64,000 nt of DNA, taken from the IMG/VR virus record IMGVR_UViG_3300001782_000005, positions 213,132 through 277,131 of that record, one strand, 5' to 3'. The notes under the pieces were generated by a model. The model saw only the letters and a list, made by a program, of their open reading frames with translations, did no database searches and was not told the DNA's origin. The translations under genes and the position numbers were made by a program. Positions 32,124-64,000 of this stretch are shown here, in pieces (the stretch's first letter is position 1; every line of letters begins with the position of its first letter).

Positions 32124-33098
32124 ATGGCGAAAAGTGGAGAACTCACAAACAAGTCTTTGGCAAAAAGAATTGATAAATTTATAGATAACCGAATTTTAGT
32201 TGTTGGTGATATAATAGTAGATGAATTTATATGGGGTCATGTCAAAAGAGTTTCCCCCGAAGCTCCAGTCCCAATAGTTAATGTTGAAAGGCGATCCATG
32301 ATGCTCGGAGGCGCCGGAAACGTAGTACATAACATTATTTCTTTGGGGGGAAATGCTACAATCTGTGGAGTAATCGGGAGTGATTCTACAGGATGGAAGT
32401 TACGAGAAATGCTTATAAGCATAAGCAGCCCTACCGACTATATTATAATAGATGAAGGAAGACCAACTACTGTAAAAACTAGAGTAGTAGCTCACTCTCA
32501 GCAAGTTGTTCGAGTCGACCTGGAAGATACAAAACCTATTAGCTCAGAATATACCAAGAAAATTCTAGATGCAATTACTGACCAATTACCAATACTACAC
32601 GCTATTATAATTGCTGATTATGGAAAGGGTGTTGTTACTCAAGAGCTTATGGACGGAATTCGCTCAATTATACCTAATGATCTTATTTTAGCAGTAGATC
32701 CTAAGGTACAGAATATAGAATTATATAAAGGGGCCACACTAATTACTCCTAATTCTTATGAAGCTAAACTTATGGCAAATACAGATACTATAGATGAAGC
32801 TGGTCGATTACTACTCGATAAACTTAATTGTAAGACAGTATTAATAACACGTGGGGAAAAGGGAATGACCCTTTTTGAAGATAATCAAATTATCCAAATA
32901 CCTACAATAGCAAGAAAGGTTTTTGATGTATCTGGAGCGGGTGATACTGTAATTAGTACCTTTACTCTATCGTTAGTCTCTGGACTAAACTCAAAGCAGG
33001 CAGCAATACTTGCAAATGCTGCAGCCGGTTTGGTGGTTGCAGAGGTTGGTACTGCTGCTATATCAGCAACTAGATTAAAACAATTTTTATTGGAGTAA
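32124..33098 (+). CDS. rfaE1: D-glycero-beta-D-manno-heptose-7-phosphate kinase (HldE kinase domain)
   Basis: ILVVGDIIVDEF, RVSPEAPVP, GGAGNV, DYGKG, ITPN, VFDVSGAGDTV. Confidence 0.92.
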   Translation: MAKSGELTNKSLAKRIDKFIDNRILVVGDIIVDEFIWGHVKRVSPEAPVPIVNVERRSMMLGGAGNVVHNIISLGGNATICGVIGSDSTGWKLREMLISISSPTDYIIIDEGRPTTVKTRVVAHSQQVVRVDLEDTKPISSEYTKKILDAITDQLPILHAIIIADYGKGVVTQELMDGIRSIIPNDLILAVDPKVQNIELYKGATLITPNSYEAKLMANTDTIDEAGRLLLDKLNCKTVLITRGEKGMTLFEDNQIIQIPTIARKVFDVSGAGDTVISTFTLSLVSGLNSKQAAILANAAAGLVVAEVGTAAISATRLKQFLLE

Positions 33099-33141
33099 GA
33101 GATGGATTATTATGAGACAATAATTGAAAAAGGATTAGAGA

Positions 33142-33642
33142 ATGCTGAACGATCAAGAAAAGAGAAGTCCGAAGATGGTGATAATGTGCGGACTACCGAA
33201 GAGCGGGAAATCGACAATAGTGGACCGAGAATTGCGGGAGTACCAAGTCATTTGTGGTGATGATATTAGACTTGCACTTGGAGTTGAATTTGATCCAAGA
33301 CTAGAAGAATTTGTGTGGGGTACATTTAATACAATGGTAAGAGCTAGTCTAATTAGAGGATTAGATGTAGTTCTTGATGGAACACATACAACAAGATTTA
33401 GAAGAGAAAGAGTTATTAATTTAGGGAAAGAATATGGAGCAGATATAACAATCATCCATGTAAAAACTCCATATGAAACTTGTATCAAAAGAGCAATCGA
33501 ATCAGACTTTCCACTAGCTGTCATGGAAAGGATGCGAGCTAATCTAGAGCTTGAACCTCCATCGGAAGAAGAAGGTGTAGAAGTAGTTGAGAAGAGTGTT
33601 GAAATTATTCACGGAGCTGTTGTAATAACTGGATACAATTAA
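33142..33642 (+). CDS. P-loop kinase (AAA_33 / polynucleotide-kinase-like)
   Basis: CGLPKSGKST, DDIR, VVLDGT. Confidence 0.8.
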   Translation: MLNDQEKRSPKMVIMCGLPKSGKSTIVDRELREYQVICGDDIRLALGVEFDPRLEEFVWGTFNTMVRASLIRGLDVVLDGTHTTRFRRERVINLGKEYGADITIIHVKTPYETCIKRAIESDFPLAVMERMRANLELEPPSEEEGVEVVEKSVEIIHGAVVITGYN

Positions 33643-33659
33643 TTAATTAGAGGATTATA

Positions 33660-33995
33660 ATGGTATATTGGATTACAGGTAGATCTGGGGCTGGTAAAAC
33701 AACTTTAGCAAAGCGTATTGCAAAACAAACAAATGGAATTATTTTAGATGGAGATAAAATAAGGGAATATTTTCCCTCTGATTTTACAGACGAGGGAAGA
33801 GAAAACAATATAATGCTTATAGCAAAATTTGCTACGTTATTAGAGGAACAGGGGTTTACAGTTGTAGTCGCTTGTGTTAGCCCAAAAAGAGAATGGAGGA
33901 GGAAGGCACAATCATTACTTAACGAATGTCTTGAAATTTGCCTTCCCTTTGGAGAATTATGGGAAGGAACTGACTATGAAGAACCAGAATATTAA
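33660..33995 (+). CDS. cysC: Adenylylsulfate (APS) kinase, short form
   Basis: WITGRSGAGKTTLA, LDGDKIR, F...R..N, YEEP. Confidence 0.8.
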   Translation: MVYWITGRSGAGKTTLAKRIAKQTNGIILDGDKIREYFPSDFTDEGRENNIMLIAKFATLLEEQGFTVVVACVSPKREWRRKAQSLLNECLEICLPFGELWEGTDYEEPEY

Positions 33996-34647
33996 AGTAG
34001 TAATTGCACCGTGGGGTGGTCATGCGACATCCCATATCCGTAGATTCATGGATGCGTATATGCGACCTGATGTGGTTCTTGGTGCTAATGGTGACATATG
34101 TCATATGCCAAAACCGACCATGCAAAAAGCATGGAAACATCGTACAGGAACCGATCTTGATATGAGTATCACTCTTAATGACAATTTAGTAAGATTTATT
34201 CATAACTCAAAAAAGCCAATTTTATTGAGTGGCGGAGTTTCCAAATTTAGTCCGTTTCTAACAATAAACTCAGTTAAAGCAATGTGTATTGTACGCAACC
34301 CTGTATATGCTTATTGTTCAATGTATAGTCGAAGGCATCCAGAAAAAGCTGAACCTTTTGGGGGAATAGATACAAAAGAATTAGCTATTTGGTATACAAC
34401 TAGATGGAATAATATCGTGTATGACTTTCTTGAATCAGGAAATCCTATTATCAGGTTTGAGCATTGGACTGATGATATGAAGCGCCAAGACGTTGGCCAA
34501 TTTAGAAAACTAATAAATTCTATAGATCATAGGAGAGCATCTACTAAAAAACCAATAAGTAAAGAAATAGAAGATTTAGTTATTAAAAGAACCAGAGAAT
34601 TATATGGAGAAATTAATAAATTTCATAAGCGCCTAAGAGGGAGATAA
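33976..34647 (+). CDS. Sulfotransferase-like protein
   Basis: IVRNPVYAYCS (3'-PB-like motif) and IIRFE; neighbours are cysC and sulfotransferases. Confidence 0.5.
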   Translation: MKNQNIKVVIAPWGGHATSHIRRFMDAYMRPDVVLGANGDICHMPKPTMQKAWKHRTGTDLDMSITLNDNLVRFIHNSKKPILLSGGVSKFSPFLTINSVKAMCIVRNPVYAYCSMYSRRHPEKAEPFGGIDTKELAIWYTTRWNNIVYDFLESGNPIIRFEHWTDDMKRQDVGQFRKLINSIDHRRASTKKPISKEIEDLVIKRTRELYGEINKFHKRLRGR

Positions 34648-34649
34648 TA

Positions 34650-35345
34650 TTGGGAGTAAAGATATTAGTAGTTGGTTTTCCAAGGAGTGGAACTACCCTT
34701 ACATACAGAGTTTGTAAGAAACATCCCCAAGTGGCGGGCATGTTTAATGAAGAACATATTCTAAGAAGTAGATCTTTACCGGGATTTCGATTTGTGAATA
34801 AGCAGTATTTATATAATAGGTACCCGAAATTCAAACTTAATTATGGAGAAAAACTAATTTATGAGAAAGGAGTTTTGGGTAAAAGGCATATATCAAATGT
34901 TACTGTAGTTGACTATTGTAAACAGTGGAATAAAACATTTGGAAAAGATTCAAGAATAATTCAAATAGTGAGACACCCCTTTGATTCTTGGAATTCAATT
35001 ATAAGGTTTAAATATAGGAGTCGAAGAATAGAGAAAGAAATACCAAGAATGTTTGATCAGTATCTTAAATGTATACCTAATTATACACAAGAAATTTCAG
35101 AATTGAAGACATGCTTAACTATCAAGTACGAGAATTTAGTTTTAAATTTTAAAGAGATCACTGCAAATATATATAAGCACTGTAATCTAGATCCCTTTAA
35201 TTATAGCGAAGTTGTAAGGACAGGAAGAGCCTTTAACTACAAGAGAAATGGTTTTGGACTAAAGGTTGATTCAAGACTTAATAAAGTTATTGATGTATTC
35301 AATAGATTCGATGGACCAAAATATGAGTTAGGAGATTCATCTTGA
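34650..35345 (+). CDS. Sulfotransferase
   Basis: VVGFPRSGTT, IVRHPFDSWNS, IKYENL. Confidence 0.85.
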   Translation: MGVKILVVGFPRSGTTLTYRVCKKHPQVAGMFNEEHILRSRSLPGFRFVNKQYLYNRYPKFKLNYGEKLIYEKGVLGKRHISNVTVVDYCKQWNKTFGKDSRIIQIVRHPFDSWNSIIRFKYRSRRIEKEIPRMFDQYLKCIPNYTQEISELKTCLTIKYENLVLNFKEITANIYKHCNLDPFNYSEVVRTGRAFNYKRNGFGLKVDSRLNKVIDVFNRFDGPKYELGDSS

Positions 35346-36130
35346 AATTTCCAGACTTTATAATAGCAGGTTTTATGAAATGTGGAACAACACAACTATT
35401 TCTAAATTTAAATAAACACCCTGACGTAACAATGTGCAAACCAGCAGGGCCAATAAGACCAGGAGTCAGTGGTGGTACAGAAATGAGATTCTGGGGTTTA
35501 AATAATTGGAAGAGAGGAGTCGACTGGTATAAAAGTAGATTTCAGGGTGATATTTGTGGTGAGAAAAGTCCAGATTATGCAGGTTATAAAAAGTGTATGA
35601 GACTTATGTCTCAACATTCTCCAGACACTAAGCTATTAATAGGTATTAGAAACCCAATTGATCGAGCATATTCACATTATCAGATGAATCTCCAGCAGAG
35701 AAAATTAAGTTGGCCATTTAGTCTTGATAATTGTAAAAGTCAACCTAGGGGAAAACTCTATTTACAGTTGGGTATGTATCATAAGCTACTTACAAATAAT
35801 GTTCTATTATTTTTCCCAAGAGAACAGATTTATATATACATTTGTGAGAGGATGAAAGTTAATTTAACTGAGGAGATGAAAAAGATATATAATTTTATTG
35901 GAGCTAAACTAATTGAATTGCCAACTGAGAGAATACCTACGTCTAAGAGGTATAATAAAAAGACAGATGATATGTACGAGGATAGTCAGGAAAAAGTATA
36001 TAAAGTTTGGTCAAGAAAATATGAACCTATAAAGAAAAAGGATAAAAGAGAGTTTAATGATTTTTATAAAGAACATAATGAAAAGTTATTTGACCTTCTA
36101 GGATACAGAATAGAGGAATGGGAGAATTAA
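35342..36130 (+). CDS. Sulfotransferase
   Basis: PDFIIAGFMKCGTT, GEKSPDY, RNPIDRAYSHY. Confidence 0.88.
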   Translation: MKFPDFIIAGFMKCGTTQLFLNLNKHPDVTMCKPAGPIRPGVSGGTEMRFWGLNNWKRGVDWYKSRFQGDICGEKSPDYAGYKKCMRLMSQHSPDTKLLIGIRNPIDRAYSHYQMNLQQRKLSWPFSLDNCKSQPRGKLYLQLGMYHKLLTNNVLLFFPREQIYIYICERMKVNLTEEMKKIYNFIGAKLIELPTERIPTSKRYNKKTDDMYEDSQEKVYKVWSRKYEPIKKKDKREFNDFYKEHNEKLFDLLGYRIEEWEN

Positions 36131-36131: not shown

Positions 36132-36503
36132 ATGGAAACAATGGCTAAAATTATGACCTTTATAAAAGATTTTGGGATTGTCATACTAGCAGTCATCATA
36201 GGTATTATATTCTTCAGCATGAGAACTGAAACGTCAGAAATGTTAAGAAATCAATTCGAATATAATATGAGGCAACAGGAGAATATATATAAGCTAGTTG
36301 ACAGTCTACAAAATTTGGCTAAAGCACAGCAAGATTTTGTGACCAAATTCGAACAAAGAAAAGAAGTGGTACAAGAAATAAAAGTTGACTTAGGTAGATC
36401 AATACGAACGCTTAACAGAAGTGTTAAGGAGCTAAAAAATGTTCAAGATCCTAAAGAATCCTATACTCTTCTTGCTAATTCTTGGAGTTGGAGTCCTAAC
36501 TAG
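36132..36503 (+). CDS. Membrane-anchored coiled-coil protein (i-spanin-like)
   Basis: N-terminal TM plus coiled coil; overlaps a lipoprotein gene. Confidence 0.45.
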   Translation: METMAKIMTFIKDFGIVILAVIIGIIFFSMRTETSEMLRNQFEYNMRQQENIYKLVDSLQNLAKAQQDFVTKFEQRKEVVQEIKVDLGRSIRTLNRSVKELKNVQDPKESYTLLANSWSWSPN

Positions 36504-37026
36504 TTGTGCAGGAGCACAAAAATTCGAACCTCCTGATGAATTTAAACCAATTGAAGTAGAGGAAAGATTTACTAAACCATTTAAACTTAGAATAGACAAA
36601 TTAGCTGAAATTTTGGAGAAGGTTCACAAGATGGATAAACCTGTTCCAATCTATCTTGTGAGAAAGGGGAATACTAGTGACTTTGATTGGGAAGGGGAAA
36701 TTCCCGATGATGCTCAGATAATCGGTTACCTTGTGAAAGAGCATAATAAGATAGTTGCTAAAATAGAGCAAGGTAAGATGATGACTGAGATTGCTGACCT
36801 TCTTGTACAAAGAGTTCAAGTTGAAGTAGAACTTTATAACTCAATGCTAGAACTAGTCAAACTCCAAGATGTTACCGTTCAACGATATAGAACTTTATGG
36901 ATAAATGCAGAGAATAGAGTCTTACAATTGGAGTATGAATTGAAGCAACAAAGAATAGAACATAAGGTTACACTTGGAGTTGTGGGAACTGTAGCGGTGG
37001 CAATAGCAGTAATATTAGCGTTATAG
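36439..37026 (+). CDS. Lipoprotein with a C-terminal hydrophobic segment (spanin-like)
   Basis: Lipobox VLTS-C; terminal VTLGVVGTVAVAIAVILAL. Confidence 0.5.
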   Translation: MFKILKNPILFLLILGVGVLTSCAGAQKFEPPDEFKPIEVEERFTKPFKLRIDKLAEILEKVHKMDKPVPIYLVRKGNTSDFDWEGEIPDDAQIIGYLVKEHNKIVAKIEQGKMMTEIADLLVQRVQVEVELYNSMLELVKLQDVTVQRYRTLWINAENRVLQLEYELKQQRIEHKVTLGVVGTVAVAIAVILAL

Positions 37027-40733: not shown

Positions 40734-41378
40734 ATGAATAGAGAAAGAATCCTTGCAATCGGAGGTCATGTAATAAAAACTGCCAAATTAGATTTGGGGG
40801 AAGTTATCAAACGCGGAAATGTCGAGATGTTGATTCATAATGGTGGTTCAATATTTCATGACTTTCAATTATCAACTGATTTTGAACTTAATATTATTGG
40901 AAAACATTCTTATGACTTAGATAAACTAATTGTGGATCCAGGTATTAATCGAGTTGCTAGTTCAGTTGTATGGAATTGGATCAAAGATAAAGAAGAGTCA
41001 CCAAATGGTTCTATAACAAAACTATGTGAAGACTTAGGAATACCAGTGCTTCTATTTACTGCACCAGGTTGTGATTTTTGGCATTTGTTTGAGGGTGAGG
41101 AATATTGGATTGAACTTGCTAAAAGGATGTATAGAGATTTTGGAGATCTCAGACTTAGACTAAAATTTCCTTTTCATTATGTTTGTATGGGATCTGCTGT
41201 TATCCATCCAGAGGTTTTTACTAAAGCAATATCTGGTATCAGAAAACCGGAATTTAGAGCTGATGTTGTTGATTTCCTTGATATGTATAGACCTAGGACT
41301 AGAGTGGCAAAGTATGGTAAATATTATAAAATGGAACATAAGGAGTATTTACAAAGATGGATCATGGGAAAGTTGTAG
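40734..41378 (+). CDS. Deoxyhypusine-synthase-like fold protein (resembles the GSU2086 family)
   Basis: GGHVIK, HNGGSIFHDF, GSAVIHPEVFTKA and YRP motifs; family recognised from memory only. Confidence 0.5.
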   Translation: MNRERILAIGGHVIKTAKLDLGEVIKRGNVEMLIHNGGSIFHDFQLSTDFELNIIGKHSYDLDKLIVDPGINRVASSVVWNWIKDKEESPNGSITKLCEDLGIPVLLFTAPGCDFWHLFEGEEYWIELAKRMYRDFGDLRLRLKFPFHYVCMGSAVIHPEVFTKAISGIRKPEFRADVVDFLDMYRPRTRVAKYGKYYKMEHKEYLQRWIMGKL

Positions 41379-42972: not shown

Positions 42973-43401
42973 TTGCAGGAGATAAGAAACTTGAATGACG
43001 AAAGAATATTTGTTTTCACAAATGGTTGTTTTGACATATTACATTGTGGTCATTTGAGGGTATTTCAGTATGCAAGAACCCTAGGTGACTATGTAATAGT
43101 CGGCCTCAATAGCGACCAGTCCGTCAGGGAGTTGAAAGGTCCAGGTCGTCCCATTATACCCCAAGACGAGAGAAAAGAGATGTTAGAGTCTATTAGGTTC
43201 GTTGATAAAGTCATCATATTTGATGAACTAACCCCACTGAAGTTGATAGAGGCCATACGACCTAACATTATAGTCAAGGGTGAAGATTGGAAGGATCGAG
43301 AAGTCGTGGGATCTCACATTGCAAAGGTTAAGTTTGTACCCATATTGAAGAGGTACTCCACAACGGAGATTGTAGAGAGGATTAGAGGAGTTGAAAAATA
43401 A
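42973..43401 (+). CDS. rfaE2: Heptose-1-phosphate adenylyltransferase (HldE transferase domain)
   Basis: VFTNGCFDILHCGH, VGLNSDQSVRELKGPGRP, VKGEDW, STTEI. Confidence 0.9.
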   Translation: MQEIRNLNDERIFVFTNGCFDILHCGHLRVFQYARTLGDYVIVGLNSDQSVRELKGPGRPIIPQDERKEMLESIRFVDKVIIFDELTPLKLIEAIRPNIIVKGEDWKDREVVGSHIAKVKFVPILKRYSTTEIVERIRGVEK

Positions 43402-54730: not shown

Positions 54731-56087
54731 TCAGTATTCTAATCTATGGGGAGAAGATGGAGAACAGTGGAGTCCTCAAAGTTACCTACCTGATTTTTCT
54801 TATGCTGGTTACCACCATGGAGAAGAACCTCTACCAAAAATAAATCAGTGTGTAAGTATAGTGGATGATTTTGGAGCGAAAGGTGATGGTCGTGATAGTT
54901 CACAAGCATTTCTCGATGCTATAGAAGTAAATAGACCTATCTATATTCCTTCTGGTCGTTATAAGATTACTAAGATTATTGAAAGTAAAGTATCACTCAT
55001 AGGAGAGGACCCAGACAAGACGGTTTTATATTTCCCCAACCACCTGACTGATATTAAACCAGATTGGAAAATTACTCCTGAAATGAGAATTTCTAATTAC
55101 TCATGGTCTGGAGGTTTTATCTGGATTAAGGGAAATTTTGAAAAGAGATTTCTTACATCTATTATTGCAGAAGCTAAGCGTGGAGAGGACTCTTTAATAG
55201 TTTCTTCAGCAGATGAGTTAAGGGTTGGCCAAAGGATTGAAATAAAATTTAGAAGAAAAAGTAATTCTTTAGTACAATATCTATACTCAGGCGATTCTGG
55301 TGATACTGATAATTGGAAAGATATAAAAGTCTCGTTAGTTTGTAGAATTACTGAGGTTAAAGGTAACCTAATTATATTTGATCGCCCCCTACGTTTCGAT
55401 GTAAAATTGGAATGGTTACCTGAAGTTTATCAATTTAATTCAAGTGTGACCAAAATTAGTATAGAGAATCTATGTTTTGAATTTCCAAATACGTTGTACG
55501 ATGGTCATTTTTCTGAACTTGGTTATAATGCTTTAGCTTTAAGTAATGTCTCAGACTGTTGGGTAAGAAATATAAAGATTGTGAATGCTGATAGTGGAAT
55601 ATTTATTGATAGAAGTAAATTCTGTACTATCCAAAATATTATTTTTGAATCAAACCGGAAAGGTAGAGATAATTGTGTTGGTCATCATGGTATATATCTA
55701 CAGGGAGATGATAATCTTTTTACTAATTTTGAATTTAAAGTTCAATTTATACATGATATCTCAGTAAGTAATTGCTCAGGTAATGTCTGTTGTGATGGTA
55801 GAGGTATAAACTTGTGTTTTGATCATCATAAAAAAGCTCCTTATGAGAACCTGTTTACTAATATTGATGCTGGATTAGGAAGTCGTATGTGGATATCTGG
55901 TGGAGGAGAAAAACTCGGGAGACACTGTGGAGCACGAGGTACCTTCTGGAATATACGATCTAAAAATCCTCAGAAATATCCTATAGATTTTGGTCCCAAT
56001 TCAGTAAATCTAGTAGCCATAAAATCCGAAAGTATTTATCCACAGAATATTTATAGGTCTCAATTAGCTAGAAGATTAAGGAGATAA
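54675..56087 (+). CDS. Pectin-lyase-like beta-helix protein (putative depolymerase)
   Basis: LPDFSYAGY, DFGAKGDG.DSSQAF..AI, IPSGRY, CWVRNI, NLFTN; start uncertain. Confidence 0.75.
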   Translation: MPLIGDTVEVLSIHQHGHNQYSNLWGEDGEQWSPQSYLPDFSYAGYHHGEEPLPKINQCVSIVDDFGAKGDGRDSSQAFLDAIEVNRPIYIPSGRYKITKIIESKVSLIGEDPDKTVLYFPNHLTDIKPDWKITPEMRISNYSWSGGFIWIKGNFEKRFLTSIIAEAKRGEDSLIVSSADELRVGQRIEIKFRRKSNSLVQYLYSGDSGDTDNWKDIKVSLVCRITEVKGNLIIFDRPLRFDVKLEWLPEVYQFNSSVTKISIENLCFEFPNTLYDGHFSELGYNALALSNVSDCWVRNIKIVNADSGIFIDRSKFCTIQNIIFESNRKGRDNCVGHHGIYLQGDDNLFTNFEFKVQFIHDISVSNCSGNVCCDGRGINLCFDHHKKAPYENLFTNIDAGLGSRMWISGGGEKLGRHCGARGTFWNIRSKNPQKYPIDFGPNSVNLVAIKSESIYPQNIYRSQLARRLRR

Positions 56088-56089: not shown

Positions 56090-57007
56090 TTGTGGGGTTT
56101 GACTTCATTCTTTAATCCTATTGGATATAAGAACAAGGTTAAGAATTATAGGAAGTTTAGGTTATCTAGTCAAAAGCAAGGGTTGAAACTTTTATGTGTT
56201 GAGTTATCATTCGGAGGTAGGGAACCTGAGTTAACTAAAGATGATGCTGATATTTTGATCCAACTAAGATCTAATACGATATTATGGCAAAAAGAGCGTT
56301 TACTAAATATTGGTCTAAGAAATCTTCCGGATGATTGTACTAAGATTATCTGGATTGACTGTGACATTATTTTTCAGAATGATAATTGGGTTGAGGAAGT
56401 ATATAAATCTTTGGATAAGTATTTTGTTATTCAACCTTTTTCATTCGTTATTAGATTACCAAAGGATGGAATAATAAGTTCTGAGGATTTGCCTTTTGGA
56501 TTAGAAGAGGGTCAAAAAATTCATAGTATGGGTTACGGTATGCGAGATTCTGATAGGGAAAAGCTCTTTGATTTTTTTATACATGGTCATTCTGGGTTTG
56601 CCTGGGCTGCCAGAAGAGAGATTTTTAATAAGCACGGTTTTTATGATAGGTTAATTCTTGGTTCTGGTGACTTGATGATGGCCCATACTTTCTACGGTCA
56701 TAAATTTAATTATATTAGGAGTTTGTCTTCTGAACCAATGCAATTAGATCAAGATGTGTGGTTTGAGGAAATTTATAATATAGTTAAAAGCAATGTTTAT
56801 TTTGTTCCTGGTCTAATTTTTCATCTATGGCATGGAGATAAAATTAATAAGCTTCATGATGAGAGATTTGAGATTCTTGTCTCGGAGAATTTTGACCCCA
56901 GAAAAGACATTAAACTAGATAGTAATGATTGCTGGACTTGGGCAACTAACAAACCAAAATTGCACCAATGGTGTGAGAAATATTTTAGTTTTAGAAAAGA
57001 AGAGTAA
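56090..57007 (+). CDS. Glycosyltransferase-like (GT-A) protein
   Basis: LWQKERLLN, WIDCD (DxD), GFAWA, HLWHG. Confidence 0.6.
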   Translation: MWGLTSFFNPIGYKNKVKNYRKFRLSSQKQGLKLLCVELSFGGREPELTKDDADILIQLRSNTILWQKERLLNIGLRNLPDDCTKIIWIDCDIIFQNDNWVEEVYKSLDKYFVIQPFSFVIRLPKDGIISSEDLPFGLEEGQKIHSMGYGMRDSDREKLFDFFIHGHSGFAWAARREIFNKHGFYDRLILGSGDLMMAHTFYGHKFNYIRSLSSEPMQLDQDVWFEEIYNIVKSNVYFVPGLIFHLWHGDKINKLHDERFEILVSENFDPRKDIKLDSNDCWTWATNKPKLHQWCEKYFSFRKEE

Positions 57008-57930
57008 TGAAATCTATTCGATTAGAAGCTACAACAATTTGTCAACTAAAGTGTCCCTCTTGTCCGACATCTTCAGGAGATGTGAGTAGGTATCTTGGAT
57101 CTGGACATCTTCGAATTGAGGATTTTAAAAATCTCGTTGATAGTAACTCTTGGATTTCGAATATTGAACTTTCTAATTGGGGGGAGATTTTTCTCAACCC
57201 GGACTTGATACCTATTTTTTACCACGCTTATAAGAGAGATGTAGGTTTGAGTGCTGATAATGGTGTAAATCTAAATACTGTTAGTCGAGATATTCTTGAA
57301 GCAATGATTGTATATAAATTTCGAAGTATGAAATGTTCTATTGATGGAGCTACACCAGGGACTTATAGTATCTATCGACGCAGAGGAGATTTTAATGCTG
57401 TGATAGAGAATATTCAAACTATCAATTATTTTAAGAAGCAGTACAATTCTAGATATCCACAGTTAACTTGGCAATTTATAATGTTTGATCATAATATACA
57501 CGAACTTGAAAGTGCAGGGGAAATGGCTAAAAAGTTAGGTATGAGTTTTTTCCCTAAACTTTCTTGGGAAAATTTTTATGTTAAAGATTCTATAGCTAAA
57601 CCTGAGAGAGCTCCTACACGAGAAGAATTTAAGAACAGATTTGGTAAGCATTATATTCGAAACCTCTGTACTCAACTATGGACAAAACCTCAAATTAATT
57701 ATGATGGAAAAGTCCTTGGTTGCTGTGTTCAGTATTGGGGAGATTTTGGTAATGCTTTTAAAGAAGGTCTCAGAGAGAGTTTGAATAATGAGAAGATTGA
57801 ATATGCTCGTCAGATGCTCTTGGGAGAAGAAGATAGCCGTCAAGACATTGCTTGTAGTTCCTGTGAGGTTTACCTGGAGATGAAAGAATCTCAGAATTGG
57901 ATAAAGATGAGTGAGGTCCATGAAATTTAA
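57007..57930 (+). CDS. Radical SAM/twitch protein
   Basis: CQLKCPSC, NWGE, SIDG, C-terminal C...GCC...CSSC. Confidence 0.85.
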   Translation: MKSIRLEATTICQLKCPSCPTSSGDVSRYLGSGHLRIEDFKNLVDSNSWISNIELSNWGEIFLNPDLIPIFYHAYKRDVGLSADNGVNLNTVSRDILEAMIVYKFRSMKCSIDGATPGTYSIYRRRGDFNAVIENIQTINYFKKQYNSRYPQLTWQFIMFDHNIHELESAGEMAKKLGMSFFPKLSWENFYVKDSIAKPERAPTREEFKNRFGKHYIRNLCTQLWTKPQINYDGKVLGCCVQYWGDFGNAFKEGLRESLNNEKIEYARQMLLGEEDSRQDIACSSCEVYLEMKESQNWIKMSEVHEI

Positions 57931-58950: not shown

Positions 58951-60381
58951 ATGGGTGAAGTTATTGATATGGAACAGAAGGAAGATGGAATCGTTGAGAT
59001 GAAGGAAAAGCAACCTGAATCCGGTTTTACAATTCAGGATAAAAGGAAACTTGCTCCGCACCCTCAACCTGAACCCCCTAAACAGTTTAAGCAAAAGAGT
59101 GTAGGGAAGGGTAAGAAAGAGAAGATTTGTATTGTCACAAACTTCATGGAGTTTAATCCTCGCTACTCATTAACTGGAATTGTTAAAGACCACATTCAAG
59201 CACTCACGAAAAATGGGCACAAAGTTGGCCTTATTGTCAACGAAAAATATAGGGATCAGGATTTTAAGGGTGTTGAGATGCTCAAAGTCCTTCCTTTTGC
59301 CCATTTAAAAGATTACCACAATATAAATGACCTAAAAGAAGAACACAAAGTTACGATTGATAAGACAGAACAGGTACTTAAAAAAGTGTTTACTAATACA
59401 GATGGAGATGGAGATGTTTATGAATTAGCTTTCTGCCATGATATAAATTTCCAAGGTTGGTTCCTACCTTACAAATTAGGTCTCGAAAAAGCATCTTTTC
59501 AACTTCCCCATGTTAGATGGCTTCATTGGGTTCATAGTATTCCAAGTGGTATGCGCGAATATTGGAAAATTCCAAGCAAGAAGCATAAGATCATATTTCC
59601 TAATGAAACTGATAGACTACGAGTTGCTGAACAATTTAGAGGGGAGTTGGATGATGTTCGAATTGTTCACCATATAAAGGATATGAGAACCTTTATGGAT
59701 TTTGATCCAATTGCTTGTAGGATGATAGATCAATATGACTTAATGAATGCTTCTATTATTCAAGTATATCCGGCTTCAGTTGATCGTCTTCATGCTAAAG
59801 GTGTTGATTATGTTATAAGAATCTTCTCTAACCTAAAGAAGCAGGGAGAAAGTGTTAGACTTATTATTCTAAACCAGTGGTGTAATGTTGACAAACATCG
59901 TCAAACCGTTGAGCAATATTGCCAGACTGCTAGGGGTCTTGGTTTAGAACCAGATAAAGAATTAATATTTAGTTCACGTTTTGAAACTCCCCGCTTTGAA
60001 ACAGGTGTTGATGCTAATATTGTGAAAGATTTATTTTCTCTTTCGAACCTCTTTATTTTTCCAACGAGAGAAGAAGCATTTGGACTTGTTCTTCCTGAGG
60101 CTGCTTTAAGTGGTGGAGTGCTATTAGTATTGAATAGATCTCTACAAATGCAGTCAGAGGTTGCAGGTTTAAATGCCCTGTACTTTGATTTTGGAAGTTT
60201 TACCCATAATTTTTCAATACCGGGTGATAAATATTACGAAGATATAGCAACTATTATTAGAGGTAGAATGAGACAAGAATACTCACTTATGGCAAAGACA
60301 TTTATGAGACGGATGTATAATATGGATAGAATTTATAAGGAGGAGATGTTGCCCATTATTGGGGAGAGCAGAAATTGGTAG
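58951..60381 (+). CDS. GT4-like glycosyltransferase
   Basis: KGVD...LFIFPTREEAFGLVLPEA. Confidence 0.8.
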   Translation: MGEVIDMEQKEDGIVEMKEKQPESGFTIQDKRKLAPHPQPEPPKQFKQKSVGKGKKEKICIVTNFMEFNPRYSLTGIVKDHIQALTKNGHKVGLIVNEKYRDQDFKGVEMLKVLPFAHLKDYHNINDLKEEHKVTIDKTEQVLKKVFTNTDGDGDVYELAFCHDINFQGWFLPYKLGLEKASFQLPHVRWLHWVHSIPSGMREYWKIPSKKHKIIFPNETDRLRVAEQFRGELDDVRIVHHIKDMRTFMDFDPIACRMIDQYDLMNASIIQVYPASVDRLHAKGVDYVIRIFSNLKKQGESVRLIILNQWCNVDKHRQTVEQYCQTARGLGLEPDKELIFSSRFETPRFETGVDANIVKDLFSLSNLFIFPTREEAFGLVLPEAALSGGVLLVLNRSLQMQSEVAGLNALYFDFGSFTHNFSIPGDKYYEDIATIIRGRMRQEYSLMAKTFMRRMYNMDRIYKEEMLPIIGESRNW

Positions 60382-61206: not shown

Positions 61207-61794
61207 ATGCGGCAAAATTTAACCGATTTTATATCAGAAGAGAATATTTTTGAAACTATTAAGGAAAGGTTTGGTAGCAAAATTAATAATGAGGCTACCG
61301 CAATTGACAAAATTGAGATTAGTCGGATACTAAAAGACTTCATTGAGATAGTAAAACCAAAGAAGATTCTGGAGATTGGAACTTATCAAGGATTATCTGC
61401 AGCCTACTTAAGTTTATTTGCGGAAGTAATAACTGTAGATTTGCATTTTCAACCCATTTCGAAAGAGATATGGGATTATCTAGGGGTTTCTGAAAGAATT
61501 AGATTTTTCGTTTCTCCAGAGCTAGATCGAATAAAGAAATTTGTTGAGAATCTCGATTTTGATTGTGCTTTTATTGATGGTGAACATACATATAAAGCAG
61601 TATCTCATGATTATGAACTTGTTAGGAAATGTGGGAATGTGATTTTTCACGACTATGCATGGCATTTAATAAAGGAGAATAAGGAGGATAGTTTTCCAGG
61701 TGTAACAAAATTTGTGAATTCTTTACCTGAAGATGAAGTTTTGAAATCTCCGCCTTTTGCTTTATGGAGGGATGAAAATGCCAGAAGAGAATAA
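61207..61794 (+). CDS. Class I SAM methyltransferase (Methyltransf_24-like)
   Basis: ILEIGTYQGLS, FIDGEHTY, IFHDY. Confidence 0.85.
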   Translation: MRQNLTDFISEENIFETIKERFGSKINNEATAIDKIEISRILKDFIEIVKPKKILEIGTYQGLSAAYLSLFAEVITVDLHFQPISKEIWDYLGVSERIRFFVSPELDRIKKFVENLDFDCAFIDGEHTYKAVSHDYELVRKCGNVIFHDYAWHLIKENKEDSFPGVTKFVNSLPEDEVLKSPPFALWRDENARRE

Positions 61795-62212: not shown

Positions 62213-62213
62213 T

Positions 62214-62747
62214 TTGAAGTTGAATCTTGGTAGTGGTATAATGTTGAAGAAAGAATTTGTTAATTATGATATGAAGATACGTAAACCTGAAATGGATGTA
62301 CCTAGAGTGGTTGGAATGATTGAGTATTTACCGTTCAAAGAAAATAGTTTTGATGAAGTATTGAGTTCTCATGTAATCGAACATTTTCAACCTGAGCAAA
62401 GTATACAAATGCTTAAAGATATATACTATGTTCTTAAACCCGGAGGAATTTTAATAATTGAAGGTCCAGATATCTTAGGTGCTTATTGGTATTATGTTGG
62501 TTGTGACTGTGGTAATAGATGGGGTGGCCGGAAAGAACCAGATGTTAAGAGCTTAATTGATTGTATCTTTGCAAACGTTCACAGGTATACTCGTGGAGAA
62601 GAGTGGACACATAAATCTGGTTGGACTGGGTGTATGGTTGCTCAACATATGGCTGAGATTGGATTCTATATTAGGCATGTTGGAAAAGGTTGGACACATG
62701 GAATGGGCCGTAGAGATTTTAGAGTAGAAGGGATTAAAAGTGGTTGA
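62214..62747 (+). CDS. Class I SAM methyltransferase
   Basis: LNLGSG, LPFKENSFDEV.SSHVIEH, VLKPGG. Confidence 0.85.
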   Translation: MKLNLGSGIMLKKEFVNYDMKIRKPEMDVPRVVGMIEYLPFKENSFDEVLSSHVIEHFQPEQSIQMLKDIYYVLKPGGILIIEGPDILGAYWYYVGCDCGNRWGGRKEPDVKSLIDCIFANVHRYTRGEEWTHKSGWTGCMVAQHMAEIGFYIRHVGKGWTHGMGRRDFRVEGIKSG

Positions 62748-63669
62748 TCTAGCTGGGAAATTAATTGTTGGAACTTATGGAGCGTATTTGATTCTGGATC
62801 CAGAAACTGGAGATTATGATATCTTTAAGAGGCACCACCAACTTTATCATTGGGGAATAACTTGGAGTGATAGATTTCTCGTTACTTGTGTTTGGTTGGG
62901 TATTTCAACAACTTTCCTTTTTTATGATCGTAATTTTAAAAGGATAGAAACTATTAAACCTCCAGAACATCGTTCAATTATTGCTCCTCATCAGATTCTT
63001 TGGTTTGATGATAAACTCTGGATTGCTAATACTCAATATGATTATGCAAATATTTATGATTTTGATAATAAGAGTTGGGAAATTTGGAGGATGTTTAACG
63101 AAAAAACCTATAGGGGGCCAGAGAAGAGGGGTGGAGATATTTATCATATGAATGGCGTTTGGTTTTATGATGGTCATGTTTTTGTTTGTGCTCATAATAA
63201 ACAGAGGCCAAGTTTTATTTCAATTTTTGAGTATCCCAGTTTGAAGTATATAGAAACTCTAGATGTTGGCAGAATGATCCATAATATATGGTGTGAAAAT
63301 GGTGAGTTTTTTACCTGCTCTTCTGGAGATGGGAAGATAATTACAACTACAGGGAAAGAAGTAGTTCGGACTGGTGGTTTCCCTAGAGGGGTTTCCATTA
63401 CTGATAAATATAATTGTATTGGAATTTCTCCTCATCATTTTCATGGTTGTAAGAAAAGAAATGAAGTTGATGGTGAGATTCAAATATATGATAAGAACTG
63501 GAATTTAATTAGAGTTTTTGTAACTAGAGGTTTTGGTCAAGTTTACGAAATGAGAATGTTTGGTAAGAGAGATATTACACACTGGGCAGGTTCTGAGAAT
63601 GTTAAATTTAATTATCCTGATTTGAGGCGAAAACCCCCTGCAGATTGCTATAGACTCTCACTTGATTAG
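62740..63669 (+). CDS. Beta-propeller protein (DUF4915-like)
   Basis: PHQI, HMNG, HN and GFPRG repeats. Confidence 0.55.
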   Translation: MVDLAGKLIVGTYGAYLILDPETGDYDIFKRHHQLYHWGITWSDRFLVTCVWLGISTTFLFYDRNFKRIETIKPPEHRSIIAPHQILWFDDKLWIANTQYDYANIYDFDNKSWEIWRMFNEKTYRGPEKRGGDIYHMNGVWFYDGHVFVCAHNKQRPSFISIFEYPSLKYIETLDVGRMIHNIWCENGEFFTCSSGDGKIITTTGKEVVRTGGFPRGVSITDKYNCIGISPHHFHGCKKRNEVDGEIQIYDKNWNLIRVFVTRGFGQVYEMRMFGKRDITHWAGSENVKFNYPDLRRKPPADCYRLSLD

Positions 63670-63678
63670 AGGTAGAGA

Positions 63679-64000
63679 ATGCCGGAATTATCAATTGTCA
63701 TTCCCTTTGTAAATGAGTATCCCCAAAATGTATTTACTATTCAAAATGTGATGTGTGAATTGGAGGGACGACTTGACTATGAAATAATTGCAGTCAACAA
63801 TTGGATTCCTAATTCCTCTTGTGGTAAAGAGCAAGACAAAGGTTTCAAATTTCTAAATAACGTCGCAAGAGGTCATGGTCCAAGGTTGAGGGTTTTACAC
63901 TATGATAAAAAGCTGTCTCATTGGAATGCTAAAAATTTTGGTATCATTCATTCAAAGTCTCCCTATCTATTCTTTTGTGATGCTCATTGTATTATTGGTA
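63679..64000 (+). CDS. GT2 glycosyltransferase (runs off the window end)
   Basis: MPELSIVIPFVNE...YEIIAVNN...NAKNFG...LFFCDAH. Confidence 0.8.
   Translation, partial: MPELSIVIPFVNEYPQNVFTIQNVMCELEGRLDYEIIAVNNWIPNSSCGKEQDKGFKFLNNVARGHGPRLRVLHYDKKLSHWNAKNFGIIHSKSPYLFFCDAHCIIG

What the first reader, a model, noticed from the sequence alone, without database searches (positions are those of the whole stretch)
32124..64000. Phage-encoded ADP-heptose, sulfation and glycosylation pathway
Split HldE (rfaE1 at 32124, rfaE2 at 42973), a GSU2086-like gene (40734) and a GT9 heptosyltransferase (60375). Also CysC with three or four sulfotransferases (33660-37764), GT2/GT4/GT-A/GT-B enzymes, two methyltransferases and radical SAM enzymes. 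Known: these make ADP-heptose and PAPS. Inference: the phage builds a sulfated/methylated heptose glycan on its virion, the host surface or its DNA. GmhA and GmhB are not visible in this window.
Basis: partly seen in the sequence, partly recalled or inferred. Interest (0 to 1): 0.65.

Follow-up and report, generated by a model that had tools for sequence, protein, structure and literature searches.

The report
Jumbo phage heptose, sulfation, glycosyltransferase cassettes
A 277-kb marine-sediment phage carries three separately conserved gene cassettes (ADP-heptose supply, sulfation, and a heptosyltransferase/methyltransferase set) that together could build a methylated, possibly sulfated heptose glycan, most likely on its own particle, though the target is not proven.

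Summary
The window is the last 64 kb of a complete 277,131-bp phage record, and the cluster runs over the record's end.

RfaE domain I passes its curated cut-off. RfaE domain II is the clear best hit. No canonical gmhA, gmhB or hldD is found anywhere in the genome.

"CysC" is a 111-aa APS-kinase-like protein without the C-terminal third that holds the lid. It is a conserved family, not a broken gene. Three sulfotransferases are supported; the fourth is not.

The GSU2086-like protein has a deoxyhypusine-synthase-like NAD-binding fold, so it is not a GmhA or GmhB look-alike. In related huge phages it sits beside the RfaE-II-like gene and a mannose-6-phosphate-isomerase-type cupin.

The 266-aa GT9 protein has a true heptosyltransferase fold with four invariant cysteines. 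It belongs to a cassette (GT4-like, GT9, methyltransferase, GT2) found in many phages and prophages. There it often follows tail genes and is often fused to the methyltransferase.

All enzymes look soluble, and there is no flippase, polymerase or Gtr gene. Virion glycosylation is the best reading (about 0.4). Host LPS remodelling, DNA glycosylation and independent modules remain open.

The parts
32124..33098 (+). [quoted passage not shown]
   Evidence: TIGR02198 355.3 bits, above the cut-off of 345; PF00294 E 8e-38
33142..33642 (+). P-loop kinase (AAA_33, polynucleotide-kinase/KTI12-like); first gene of the conserved sulfation block
   Evidence: PF13671 E 7.6e-18; kept next to the mini APS kinase in L113
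33660..33995 (+). Mini APS-kinase-like protein, 111 aa. The P-loop and DGD region are present; the C-terminal third, which holds the lid in canonical enzymes, is absent
   Evidence: PF01583 65.8 bits; TIGR00455 65.3 against 138.7; aligns to residues 7-105 of the 175-aa APS kinase 7yq0; 95 hits, mostly 105-138 aa and 39-93% identical
33976..34647 (+). 223-aa basic protein with one sulfotransferase-like motif. Family unassigned. It partners the mini-GT9 cassette in other phages
   Evidence: No Pfam, NCBIfam or PHROG hit; a profile of the three sulfotransferases scores it 4 bits; homologues of 34-40% identity lie beside the mini-GT9 in L117, L119 and L123
34650..35345 (+). PAPS-type sulfotransferase
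   Evidence: PF13469 E 1e-15, PF00685 E 3e-6; both PAPS-binding motifs visible in the translation
35342..36130 (+). PAPS-type sulfotransferase
   Evidence: PF00685 E 4.5e-13
36132..37026 (+). Two overlapping membrane/coiled-coil ORFs inside the sulfation block. The first has an N-terminal TM segment. The second has a lipoprotein signal and a C-terminal TM segment, like a spanin
   Evidence: Translations, hydrophobic segments; ORFs of 123 and 187 aa at the same place in L113
37036..37764 (+). PAPS-type sulfotransferase
   Evidence: PF13469 E 5.6e-12
40734..41378 (+). GSU2086-like protein with a deoxyhypusine-synthase-like NAD-binding fold. Conserved partner of the RfaE-II-like gene in huge phages. 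Proposed nucleotide-heptose tailoring enzyme
   Evidence: NF052581 49.5 bits; 374 homologues; model pLDDT 94.9; Z 16.4 to the AgrE C-domain, 15.3 to 3c2q, 13 to deoxyhypusine synthase; synteny
42973..43401 (+). RfaE domain II: heptose-1-phosphate adenylyltransferase, a stand-alone half of HldE
   Evidence: TIGR02199 158.6 bits (cut-off 181.5), PF01467 E 4e-21, phrog_7878 130 bits
46623..47600 (+). Radical SAM enzyme with a SPASM-like C-terminus; substrate unknown
   Evidence: PF04055 E 1.5e-10, TIGR04085 23 bits; a radical SAM gene follows the RfaE-II-like gene in L006
52296..52700 (+). Cupin_2 protein. It is not the cupin family linked to the module elsewhere; that one lies at genome 117972-118325, minus strand
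   Evidence: PF07883 E 4.9e-15; comparison of cupins; PMI-type hit for the other cupin
54675..56087 (+). Right-handed beta-helix, pectate-lyase-like protein, resembling a phage appendage or tailspike. Candidate acceptor or depolymerase. First gene of a four-gene insertion absent from relative L116
   Evidence: PF12708 E 2.3e-9, NF058554 64.6 bits, phrog_4775 pre-neck appendage; absent in L116
56090..57007 (+). Probable GT-A glycosyltransferase (a lead only)
   Evidence: No HMM hit; language-model look-alikes are viral GT-A/GT2/Glyco_transf_7C clusters, scores 0.96-0.99
57007..57930 (+). Radical SAM/SPASM enzyme
   Evidence: PF13186 E 2e-7, PF04055, TIGR04317 63 bits
57911..58948 (+). 345-aa protein of unknown family; last gene of the variable insertion
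   Evidence: No hit in Pfam, NCBIfam, PHROGs or PDB sequences
58951..60381 (+). GT4-like (GT-B) glycosyltransferase; first gene of the conserved four-gene cassette
   Evidence: PF00534 E 8e-7, phrog_2170; homologues directly upstream of the mini-GT9 in L116-L122, L129, L194
60375..61175 (+). Mini-GT9 heptosyltransferase-fold enzyme, 266 aa. Catalytic-type Asp14 and four invariant cysteines at positions 211, 214, 220 and 228
   Evidence: PF01075 25.7 bits; 149 homologues, many fused to Methyltransf_11; invariant residues; model pLDDT 92.2; Z 18.8 to 3tov, 17.1 to TibC, 16.5 to WaaC, 16.4 to WaaF
61207..61794 (+). SAM-dependent O-methyltransferase
   Evidence: PF13578 E 6.6e-12, PF01596 E 1.1e-10
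62214..62747 (+). SAM-dependent methyltransferase (Methyltransf_11); third gene of the cassette; fused to the GT9 in relatives
   Evidence: PF08241 E 2e-11; homologues after the mini-GT9 in 11 loci; fusions
62740..63669 (+). DUF4915/TIGR03032-like protein, function unknown
   Evidence: PF16261 22.3 bits, below cut-off; a DUF4915 gene follows the RfaE-II-like gene in L110; 54% identical gene in L116
63679..64000 (+). GT2 glycosyltransferase, N-terminal part. The gene continues across the record's end to genome position 714 (about 313 aa). Fourth gene of the cassette
   Evidence: PF00535 matched at profile positions 1-90 in the window and 68-163 in L001; 94-bp terminal repeat; 313-aa orthologue in L116

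Best explanation
The region joins three separately mobile glycan-biosynthesis cassettes in one lytic jumbo phage.

(1) A donor-supply module. The RfaE-I kinase and RfaE-II adenylyltransferase carry out the two HldE steps of ADP-heptose synthesis. A conserved partner with an NAD-binding fold (the GSU2086-like protein) probably oxidises or epimerises the nucleotide-heptose, since no HldD is present. The isomerase and phosphatase steps come from the host. Alternatively they come from a PMI-type cupin and a HAD-IIIA phosphatase encoded elsewhere in the phage genome.

(2) A sulfation block: a P-loop kinase, a lid-less mini APS-kinase-like protein and three PAPS-type sulfotransferases.

(3) A transferase cassette: GT4-like, a Cys4 mini-GT9, methyltransferases, a DUF4915-like protein and GT2. 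A variable insertion adds a beta-helix protein, a probable GT-A enzyme and a radical SAM/SPASM enzyme.

All of these enzymes are soluble, so they act in the cytoplasm of the infected cell. The most likely product is a heptose-containing, O-methylated and possibly sulfated glycan on the phage's own structural proteins. Candidates are the beta-helix appendage protein and the large fibre-like proteins encoded on either side.

Shown: gene identities, folds, synteny and fusions. Inferred: the role of the GSU2086-like enzyme, PAPS formation, the joint action of the three modules, and the acceptor.
For: - Enzyme identities.
- GT9 fold with WaaC, WaaF and TibC as the only strong structural matches (Z 16-19, next unrelated 7.7). 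The Asp of the GD motif aligns with the same motif of WaaC.
- GT9-methyltransferase fusions.
- The four-gene cassette (GT4-like, mini-GT9, methyltransferase, GT2) recurs in L116-L122, L129 and L194.
- In the Desulfatiglans prophage the cassette directly follows the tail genes.
- In smaller phages the GSU2086-like gene lies in GT/methyltransferase/GT9 clusters directly after the major capsid gene (L005, L111).
- GT9 genes occur in 8 of 9 viral records that carry the GSU2086-like gene.
- No TM segments or signal peptides in any transferase, and no flippase, polymerase or Gtr-type gene.
- The cluster is co-oriented with tail-fibre-like genes upstream and with 1287-, 2781- (SPRY) and 992-aa (ConA-like) proteins downstream. 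It also encloses a beta-helix appendage-like protein.
- The sulfation block is conserved en bloc in a relative.
- Homologues of the 223-aa protein lie next to the mini-GT9 in other phages.
Against: - No direct evidence for any product or acceptor. There are no RNA runs to show expression.
- The three modules occur independently elsewhere. Ten cassette-bearing viral records (five of them at least 94% complete) have no RfaE-II or GSU2086-like gene, although the GSU2086-like profile search had no positive control. L113 has the sulfation block without rfaE1 upstream.
- In jumbo-phage relatives the GSU2086-like/RfaE-II pair sits among nucleotide-metabolism genes, not structural genes.
- The end of a prophage next to the tail genes is also a classic site for lysogenic-conversion genes that alter host LPS.
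- The mini APS kinase lacks the C-terminal third that holds the lid. In L112 it occurs without sulfotransferases.
- GT9 enzymes are best known as LPS-core enzymes, and fold scores do not separate WaaC from TibC.
Confidence: 0.4

Rival explanations
1. Host envelope remodelling. The soluble GT9, GT4-like and GT2 enzymes, the methyltransferases and the sulfotransferases act on lipid-linked LPS core or capsule precursors at the inner face of the host membrane. This changes the cell surface during infection, for example to block superinfection or to stop progeny re-adsorbing to debris.
For: - GT9 is the LPS heptosyltransferase family. WaaC and WaaF are top sequence and fold matches.
- WaaC-type enzymes are soluble or peripheral, so the lack of TM segments does not exclude this reading.
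- In the Desulfatiglans provirus the cassette lies at the prophage end, next to host genes, a usual place for conversion genes.
- Huge-phage heptosyltransferase genes have been read this way before (PMC10747093).
- The spanin-like genes point to a Gram-negative host.
Against: - The mini-GT9 is 50-80 residues shorter than LPS heptosyltransferases and carries an invariant Cys4 element that they lack.
- No lipid-carrier, flippase, ligase or polymerase genes are present.
- In L005 and L111 the related clusters lie between capsid and tail genes.
- A lytic 277-kb phage gains less from surface conversion than a temperate one.
Confidence: 0.2
2. DNA hypermodification. ADP-heptose made by the phage is transferred by a GT-B enzyme to a hydroxymethyl-pyrimidine in phage DNA, as in the reported heptosyl-5hmC gene clusters. 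The other transferases extend or decorate the sugar.
For: - A phage cluster (a bifunctional HAD/APH-like enzyme, a cytidylyltransferase and a GT-B enzyme) puts one or two heptoses on 5hmC (bioRxiv 10.1101/2023.12.21.572611).
- This genome has a very divergent thymidylate-synthase-family gene at genome 201192-202055.
- In relatives the GSU2086-like/RfaE-II pair lies among QueC, MazG, dCMP deaminase, ThyS and dNMP kinase genes.
Against: - The ThyA-like gene is about 44 kb from rfaE1 and keeps the Asn typical of uracil-specific enzymes.
- No Tet/JBP, C5-methyltransferase or dNMP kinase is found in the genome.
- Five phages that are at least 94% complete and carry the same mini-GT9 cassette have no thymidylate-synthase-family gene. 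No Tet/JBP match was found either, but that search had no positive control.
- Three sulfotransferases, several transferases and a beta-helix protein go far beyond known DNA-sugar clusters.
Confidence: 0.1
3. No common pathway. The span is a mosaic of independent accessory modules that happen to be neighbours in a gene-dense late region. The heptose-nucleotide genes, the sulfation block and the transferase cassette each serve a different substrate, for example a small molecule, a host protein or a nucleotide pool.
For: - Each module is found without the others in other phages.
- The modules are separated by many small unrelated ORFs, an HD protein, a NUDIX protein and a protease.
- The mini APS kinase occurs in a NeuB/CMP-sugar cluster without sulfotransferases.
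- The four sulfotransferase-like proteins are not detectably similar to each other.
Against: - Homologues of the 223-aa protein from the sulfation block lie beside the mini-GT9 in three other phage lineages.
- GT9 genes accompany the GSU2086-like gene in 8 of 9 viral records.
- A sulfotransferase-GT1 pair recurs in the same phage clade.
- All modules concern activated sugars or sulfate and lie on one strand.
Confidence: 0.25

Closest known systems
Bacterial ADP-L-glycero-beta-D-manno-heptose pathway (GmhA, HldE, GmhB, HldD) of E. coli
   Same: Both catalytic halves of HldE are present as separate genes. Domain I scores above the equivalog cut-off.
   Different: No SIS-type GmhA, no canonical GmhB and no SDR-type HldD in the whole genome. 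The genes are split and 10 kb apart. They are accompanied by a protein with a deoxyhypusine-synthase-like fold that the E. coli pathway lacks.
GSU2086 family (NF052581); in Geobacter sulfurreducens the gene lies between hldE and gmhA (PMC5585712)
   Same: Homologous over the C-terminal two thirds. Linked to heptose genes in Geobacter, in three cellular loci with flanking RfaE-II-like genes and in phages.
   Different: The phage proteins are about 210 aa against about 320 aa, only 25-30% identical to cellular members, and far below the family cut-off. No member has a tested function.
Bacterial autotransporter heptosyltransferases (TibC, AAH), PMC4358343
   Same: Soluble GT9-like GT-B enzymes that use ADP-heptose to glycosylate a beta-helical protein in the cytoplasm. 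TibC gives the longest structural alignment (237 residues, rmsd 2.9, Z 17.1). Both carry a four-cysteine element in the C-lobe.
   Different: The phage enzyme has no N-terminal beta-barrel domain. Its cysteine spacing differs (C-x2-C-x5-C-x7-C against Cys339, 342, 358 and 370). There is no detectable sequence similarity to TibC. Oligomeric state and metal are unknown.
Virion glycosylation encoded by phages and giant viruses (mycobacteriophage capsid and tail glycosylation, from my own knowledge and PMC11256854; giant-virus glycans, PMC9614988)
   Same: Virus-encoded soluble glycosyltransferases, methyltransferases and sugar-nucleotide enzymes, placed beside structural genes.
   Different: Heptose as the sugar, a dedicated ADP-heptose supply, and a sulfation block have not been described for a phage particle to my knowledge. 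Nothing here is shown experimentally.
Phage DNA sugar hypermodification clusters, including heptosyl-5hmC (bioRxiv 10.1101/2023.12.21.572611)
   Same: A phage-encoded sugar kinase and nucleotidyltransferase plus a GT-B enzyme using heptose.
   Different: Those clusters sit beside a 5hmC- or 5hmU-forming enzyme. Here the transferases do not, and the same cassette occurs in phages without such an enzyme.
LPS and heptosyltransferase 'auxiliary metabolic genes' of huge phages and cyanophages (PMC10747093; cyanophage LPS clusters from my own knowledge)
   Same: Phage-borne LPS-type genes, including GT9. PHROGs already holds an RfaE-II-like family (phrog_7878).
   Different: The sulfotransferases, the mini-GT9 and the GSU2086-like protein match no PHROG family. 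Here the genes form recognisable conserved cassettes rather than single genes.

Membership tests
HldE domain I (TIGR02198, heptose-7-phosphate kinase) | Whole-protein score above the curated equivalog cut-off (345 bits) | tested here: met
   355.3 bits, full-length match 3-313/315
HldE domain II (TIGR02199, heptose-1-phosphate adenylyltransferase) | Score above the curated cut-off (181.5 bits) and the nucleotidyltransferase HxGH motif | tested here: inconclusive
   158.6 bits, below cut-off but 96 bits above the next specific family. HxGH motif present near the N-terminus. phrog_7878 130 bits
ADP-heptose pathway (complete) | GmhA isomerase, GmhB phosphatase and HldD epimerase encoded alongside HldE | tested here: not met
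   No match to PF13580, TIGR00441, PF13242, TIGR01656 or PF01370 in the 277-kb genome. The only candidates are a weak HAD-IIIA hit at genome 43899-44612 and a PMI-type cupin at 117972-118325
APS kinase CysC (TIGR00455 / PF01583) | Full-length kinase of about 175-200 aa, with the P-loop, the DGD motif and the C-terminal lid region | tested here: not met
   The Pfam cut-off is met (65.8 bits), but TIGR00455 scores 65.3 against 138.7. The protein aligns only to residues 7-105 of a 175-aa enzyme and ends 18 residues later. The short form is conserved, so it is a distinct subfamily of untested activity
PAPS-dependent sulfotransferases (PF00685 / PF13469) | Pfam gathering score and the two PAPS-binding motifs | tested here: met
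   Met for 34650-35345, 35342-36130 and 37036-37764. Not met for 33976-34647, which has no hit and lacks the 5' phosphosulfate-binding loop
Glycosyltransferase family 9 (heptosyltransferases) | GT-B fold closest to WaaC/WaaF, N-terminal GD catalytic motif, C-lobe nucleotide-sugar site | tested here: met
   PF01075 25.7 bits against 22. Z 16-19 to the four solved GT9-type enzymes, with unrelated GT-B enzymes at 7.7 or less. The GD motif aligns with that of WaaC. Use of ADP-heptose as donor was not tested
Bacterial autotransporter heptosyltransferase family (TibC/AAH) | N-terminal beta-barrel, beta-hairpin thumb, iron finger of four cysteines, dodecamer | tested here: not met
   The protein starts directly with the GT N-lobe (model range 1-252 aligns to TibC 96-399), so there is no beta-barrel. 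A Cys4 element is present and invariant, but with different spacing. Its superposition on the iron finger could not be checked
GSU2086 family (NF052581) | Score above the curated cut-off of 250 bits over the 301-position model | tested here: not met
   49.5 bits, positions 164-276 only. Homology to the roughly 320-aa cellular members at 25-30% identity is nevertheless clear
Deoxyhypusine-synthase-like NAD-binding fold (DHS, LOR/SDH, AgrE/ArgZ C-domain) | Whole-domain structural match well above background | tested here: met
   Z 16.4 (AgrE 483-692, 186 aligned), 15.3 (3c2q), 13.1 (DHS). Sirtuins and ThDP-enzyme middle domains score 8-10. NAD binding and chemistry were not tested
Phage DNA-glycosylation gene cluster (ThyS or 5mYOX plus GT) | A 5-hydroxymethyl-pyrimidine-forming enzyme encoded with the transferase | tested here: not met
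   The ThyA-like gene is 44 kb or more away. No Tet/JBP or C5-methyltransferase is present. The cassette occurs in five near-complete phages without a ThyS-family gene
O-antigen / surface polysaccharide modification systems (Gtr, Wzx/Wzy-dependent) | Integral-membrane flippase, polymerase or GtrA/GtrC-type proteins | tested here: not met
   No multi-pass membrane protein among the ORFs from 28285 to 63669. All transferases lack TM segments. This was a hydropathy scan only
Radical SAM / SPASM enzymes | CxxxCxxC cluster motif and a SPASM C-terminal domain | tested here: met
   The motif is visible in the N-termini of both proteins. PF04055 with PF13186 or TIGR04085. Substrate unknown

The most novel reading that the evidence does not exclude
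The phage makes its own sulfate donor and its own heptose donor. A lid-less mini APS kinase taps the host's APS pool, which would be large if the host is a marine sulfate reducer, to make PAPS. The heptose donor comes from a non-canonical route: a PMI-type cupin as isomerase, RfaE-I, a HAD-IIIA phosphatase, RfaE-II, and the GSU2086-like NAD enzyme as a new type of nucleotide-heptose epimerase or oxidoreductase replacing HldD. A Cys4 mini-GT9 cassette then coats beta-helical or fibrous virion proteins with a methylated, sulfated heptoglycan. That would be the first sulfated glycoprotein coat on a bacteriophage.
Probability: 0.15. Interest if true: 0.85.

Novelty: new variant of a known kind. 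Interest (0 to 1): 0.55.

Why it matters
Phage-encoded glycosylation is known from a few cultured systems and from giant viruses. Heptose on phage DNA has only recently been reported.

This locus adds several families that can be tested directly:
- a very conserved phage enzyme with an NAD-binding fold, tied to ADP-heptose synthesis, where no HldD exists;
- a 110-aa APS-kinase-like family;
- a short heptosyltransferase with a metal-type Cys4 element, carried in a four-gene cassette by many phages and prophages.

If the product is on the virion, it would show that environmental phages can coat themselves with anionic, methylated heptose glycans. That would bear on adsorption, on sticking to sediment or mucus, and on recognition by hosts. 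If the product is on LPS or DNA, the same enzymes would define new surface-conversion or DNA-protection chemistry.

Tried and rejected
- Megablast of 24 kb of the cluster against 50,697 phage records: no match.
- The search for related loci with rfaE1 alone returned only the same phage from two sister samples.
- Canonical gmhA, gmhB and hldD models: nothing in the genome.
- GSU2086-like as a GmhA or GmhB substitute: rejected. The fold is neither SIS nor HAD. All eight cellular genomes tested that carry a homologue also have GmhA-like and GmhB-like genes.
- Cellular neighbourhoods of GSU2086 homologues: no neighbour conserved across lineages. Only 3 of 78 loci have RfaE-II-like genes nearby.
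- The four sulfotransferase-like genes as recent paralogues: rejected. Pairwise similarity is not significant.
- 'CysC is a truncated pseudogene': rejected. The short form is conserved across 95 hits.
- PDB sequence searches for 57911-58948 and 58951-60381: no hit.
- PHROGs and NCBIfam for 53136, 53768, 56090, 57911 and 62740: nothing or sub-threshold.
- The L019 protein is not on record.
- Expression could not be examined: no RNA run holds the sequence.
- No tRNA in the window.
- Residue-level superposition of the Cys4 element on the TibC iron finger was not possible with the tools.

Full report
**Where the window lies.** The window is positions 213132-277131 of a 277,131-bp IMG/VR virus record rated 100% complete. 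The G+C content is 36.7%. The record's first and last 94 bases are identical, so the assembly is circular or circularly permuted and the window's end joins the genome's start. A major head protein (2370-3824) and a tail-fibre-like protein (16790-17992) confirm a tailed phage. No cultured phage is similar at the DNA level. The same phage occurs in marine sediment and seawater metagenomes from six studies. No RNA run holds it. From window position 15529 onward, and on through genome 1-20000, almost all long ORFs are on the plus strand.

**The observation.**
- RfaE domain I (32124-33098) scores 355.3 bits against TIGR02198, above the curated 345.
- RfaE domain II (42973-43401) scores 158.6 against TIGR02199 (cut-off 181.5). 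The next specific family is far behind, and a PHROG annotated as heptose kinase/adenylyltransferase matches at 130 bits.
- Three sulfotransferases (34650, 35342, 37036) pass Pfam.
- The GT4-like gene (58951), GT9 (60375), two methyltransferases (61207, 62214) and two radical SAM/SPASM enzymes (46623, 57007) are supported.
- The last ORF of the window is the N-terminal part of a GT2 enzyme. Its remainder lies at genome 95-714.
- Beyond it come a 1287-aa protein, a BKACE enzyme, a GNAT protein, a 2781-aa SPRY protein and a 992-aa ConA-like protein.

Two corrections are needed. The fourth sulfotransferase (33976-34647) has no statistical support. 'CysC' is only 111 aa.

**The missing pathway steps.** No SIS-type GmhA, GmhB-type HAD phosphatase or SDR epimerase is detectable anywhere in the genome. 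All control genomes responded to the same models. Two weak candidates lie far outside the window:
- A HAD-IIIA protein at genome 43899-44612. Its best hit is a capsule-biosynthesis phosphatase, at 34 bits.
- A 117-aa cupin at genome 117972-118325, minus strand. Its only NCBIfam hit is the isomerase end of GDP-mannose pyrophosphorylase/mannose-6-phosphate isomerase.

The fructose-6-P to mannose-6-P reaction is the hexose analogue of the GmhA reaction. This cupin is therefore a plausible but untested isomerase.

**The GSU2086-like protein.** In Geobacter, GSU2086 lies between hldE and gmhA (PMC5585712). The phage protein has 374 homologues. The 120 listed are 54-100% identical, about 205-220 aa long, and carry no Pfam domain. 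About 50 residues are invariant. A confident model (pLDDT 94.9) matches these structures over its whole length:

| Structure | Z score |
|---|---|
| NAD-binding C-terminal domain of AgrE | 16.4 |
| LOR/SDH-like protein 3c2q | 15.3 |
| Deoxyhypusine synthase | 13 |
| Sirtuins | 8-10 |

It is therefore a deoxyhypusine-synthase-like, presumably NAD-dependent enzyme. It is neither an isomerase of the SIS type nor a HAD phosphatase.

In other huge phages it is flanked by the PMI-type cupin and an RfaE-II-like gene (L006, L007, L009, L010). In one record it sits directly downstream of a fused 472-aa HldE, and in another it is 2.5 kb from a PfkB kinase. Eight of nine viral records carrying it also carry a GT9 gene, and none has gmhA.

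Cellular homologues are about 320 aa and 25-30% identical. The eight such genomes tested all have RfaE-I-like, GmhA-like and GmhB-like genes, but none has an HldD above cut-off. Put together, these results suggest a tailoring step on the nucleotide-heptose, an epimerisation or oxidation that stands where HldD would. This is inference only.

**The sulfation block.** The 111-aa protein aligns to residues 7-105 of a 175-aa APS kinase and then stops. The C-terminal third, which holds the lid in canonical enzymes, is missing. It is not a broken gene. The search returned 95 hits, and nearly all are 105-138 aa long and 39-93% identical to the phage protein.

A relative that is 80% identical keeps the whole block: AAA_33 kinase, mini kinase, the 223-aa protein, two sulfotransferases, two membrane/coiled-coil ORFs and a third sulfotransferase (L113). 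In a marine-sediment phage contig the mini kinase sits instead among NeuB, CMP-sugar, epimerase, radical SAM/SPASM and PfkB genes, without sulfotransferases (L112). Whether it makes PAPS is therefore open. The three sulfotransferases and the 223-aa protein are not detectably similar to one another.

**The transferase cassette.** The 266-aa GT9 protein belongs to a family of 149 proteins. Most are about 250 aa, and many are fused to a Methyltransf_11 domain to give about 400 aa. Asp14 of the GD motif and four cysteines (211, 214, 220, 228) are invariant in 43 sequences.

The model (pLDDT 92.2) matches only heptosyltransferases strongly:

| Structure | Z score |
|---|---|
| Veillonella GT9 (3tov) | 18.8 |
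| TibC (237 residues aligned) | 17.1 |
| WaaC | 16.5 |
| WaaF | 16.4 |
| Best unrelated GT-B enzyme | 7.7 |

Chloroplast NDH-complex subunits come between these groups at Z 13.3-13.7. The LPS enzymes lack the Cys4 element. TibC has an iron finger of four cysteines that contacts its beta-helical substrate (PMC4358343). Equivalence of the two elements could not be checked, and the phage enzyme lacks TibC's N-terminal barrel.

A scan of viral contigs found 154 loci with relatives. In at least ten of them, and in a Desulfatiglans anilini provirus, the gene order is GT4-like, mini-GT9, methyltransferase, GT2, as in the window. In that provirus the cassette directly follows the tail genes. In three lineages a homologue of the 223-aa protein from the sulfation block lies beside the mini-GT9.

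The closest relative (L116, 85% identical) shares the order from 48617 to the 1287-aa protein. It lacks 54675-58948, so the beta-helix protein, the probable GT-A enzyme, the radical SAM/SPASM enzyme and the 345-aa protein form a variable insertion.

**Which target.**
- A hydropathy scan finds no TM segment or signal peptide in any transferase, sulfotransferase or methyltransferase. It finds no multi-pass membrane protein in the span. The chemistry is therefore cytoplasmic.
- For virion proteins: the position of related clusters directly after the capsid gene (L005, L111) or after tail genes; the enclosed appendage-like beta-helix protein; the flanking fibre-like giants; and the precedent of TibC.
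- For LPS: the family's usual role, and the prophage-end position.
- For DNA: the published heptosyl-5hmC cluster; a divergent ThyA-like gene in this genome; and the nucleotide-metabolism neighbourhood of the supply genes in relatives.
- Against DNA: five phages at least 94% complete with the same cassette have no thymidylate-synthase-family gene. This genome has no Tet/JBP, C5-methyltransferase or dNMP kinase.
- The ten cassette-bearing viral records tested, five of them at least 94% complete, also lack RfaE-II. No GSU2086-like gene was found in them either, though that profile search had no positive control. The modules are therefore separable, and the jumbo phage has combined them.

**Verdict.** The locus is a new variant of a known kind: virus-encoded glycan synthesis. 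It is interesting mainly for three untested enzyme families and for the possible first sulfated heptose glycan of a phage. The acceptor and the activities of the mini kinase and the GSU2086-like enzyme remain to be shown.

Noticed in passing
window 36132-37026 and 37737-38036: Inside the sulfotransferase block lie three small membrane proteins. One is 123 aa with an N-terminal TM segment and a coiled coil. One is 195 aa with a lipoprotein signal (lipobox ending in Cys) and a C-terminal TM segment, like a unimolecular spanin. One is 99 aa with a single TM segment and a proline-rich tail. ORFs of 123, 187 and 88 aa at the matching places are kept in relative L113. They suggest a Gram-negative host.
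   Followed up: partly
window 5004-6167, minus strand: A 387-aa transposase-like gene (phrog_4285, E 1e-27) inside the phage genome. It lies at the start of a minus-strand block between the head gene and the tail-fibre genes.
   Followed up: no
L001 4914-6783 (genome 4914-6783): A beta-keto-acid cleavage enzyme (PF05853, 259 bits; closest to 3-keto-5-aminohexanoate cleavage enzyme, 224 bits) and a GNAT acetyltransferase lie between the 1287-aa and 2781-aa ORFs. This is an unusual metabolic pair for a phage.
   Followed up: no
L001 783-4646, 6836-15181, 15216-18194: Three very large ORFs directly downstream of the cluster: 1287 aa, 2781 aa with SPRY domains, and 992 aa with ConA-like/DUF1349 domains. 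The 1287-aa protein is 57% identical to its counterpart in L116. Their roles (fibres, decoration or ejected proteins) are unknown.
   Followed up: partly
L008 1009-1872 (genome 201192-202055): A very divergent thymidylate-synthase-family protein (43 bits to PF00303). It keeps the catalytic Cys, the Arg-Ser pair, the Asp and the Asn typical of uracil specificity. It could be a dUMP hydroxymethylase or an archaeal-type synthase. A weak Macro-domain gene follows it.
   Followed up: partly
genome 184140-190296 and loci L006, L007, L010: This phage clade shares a block with a GT1 glycosyltransferase (preceded in L010 by a sulfotransferase and a papain-like peptidase), QueC, MazG, dCMP deaminase and a dGTP-diphosphohydrolase-like gene. 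This hints at 7-deazaguanine or other nucleotide-pool manipulation.
   Followed up: no
window 54675-58948 against L116 8493-10007: The closest relative (85% identity) lacks four consecutive genes: the beta-helix protein, the probable GT-A enzyme, the radical SAM/SPASM enzyme and the 345-aa protein. It goes straight from the 53768 homologue to the GT4-like gene. The four genes are therefore an indel module.
   Followed up: partly
L112 (marine sediment contig, 24 kb): The 111-aa APS-kinase-like gene there lies among NeuB, a CMP-sugar synthetase, epimerases, methyltransferases, a radical SAM/SPASM gene, UDP-glucose dehydrogenase and a PfkB kinase, next to DNA polymerase genes. No sulfotransferase is present. 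The mini kinase may therefore have a role other than PAPS synthesis.
   Followed up: no
window 51081-52193: A 370-aa protease (phrog_20754, 239 bits; weak trypsin-like and NAL1_N matches) is conserved at 77% in L116. It lies between the small-ORF region and the transferase cluster.
   Followed up: no
L069, L073, L094 (cellular loci): In three uncultured bacterial genomes the roughly 320-aa GSU2086 homologue is flanked on both sides by RfaE-II-like nucleotidyltransferase genes.
   Followed up: no
L007 2972-6777: A 302-kb relative carries a Kdo-8-phosphate-synthase-like gene, a radical SAM/SPASM gene, a transaldolase and a CMP-Kdo-synthetase-like gene a few kb upstream of its cupin, GSU2086-like and RfaE-II genes. 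Transaldolase makes sedoheptulose-7-phosphate, the heptose precursor.
   Followed up: no
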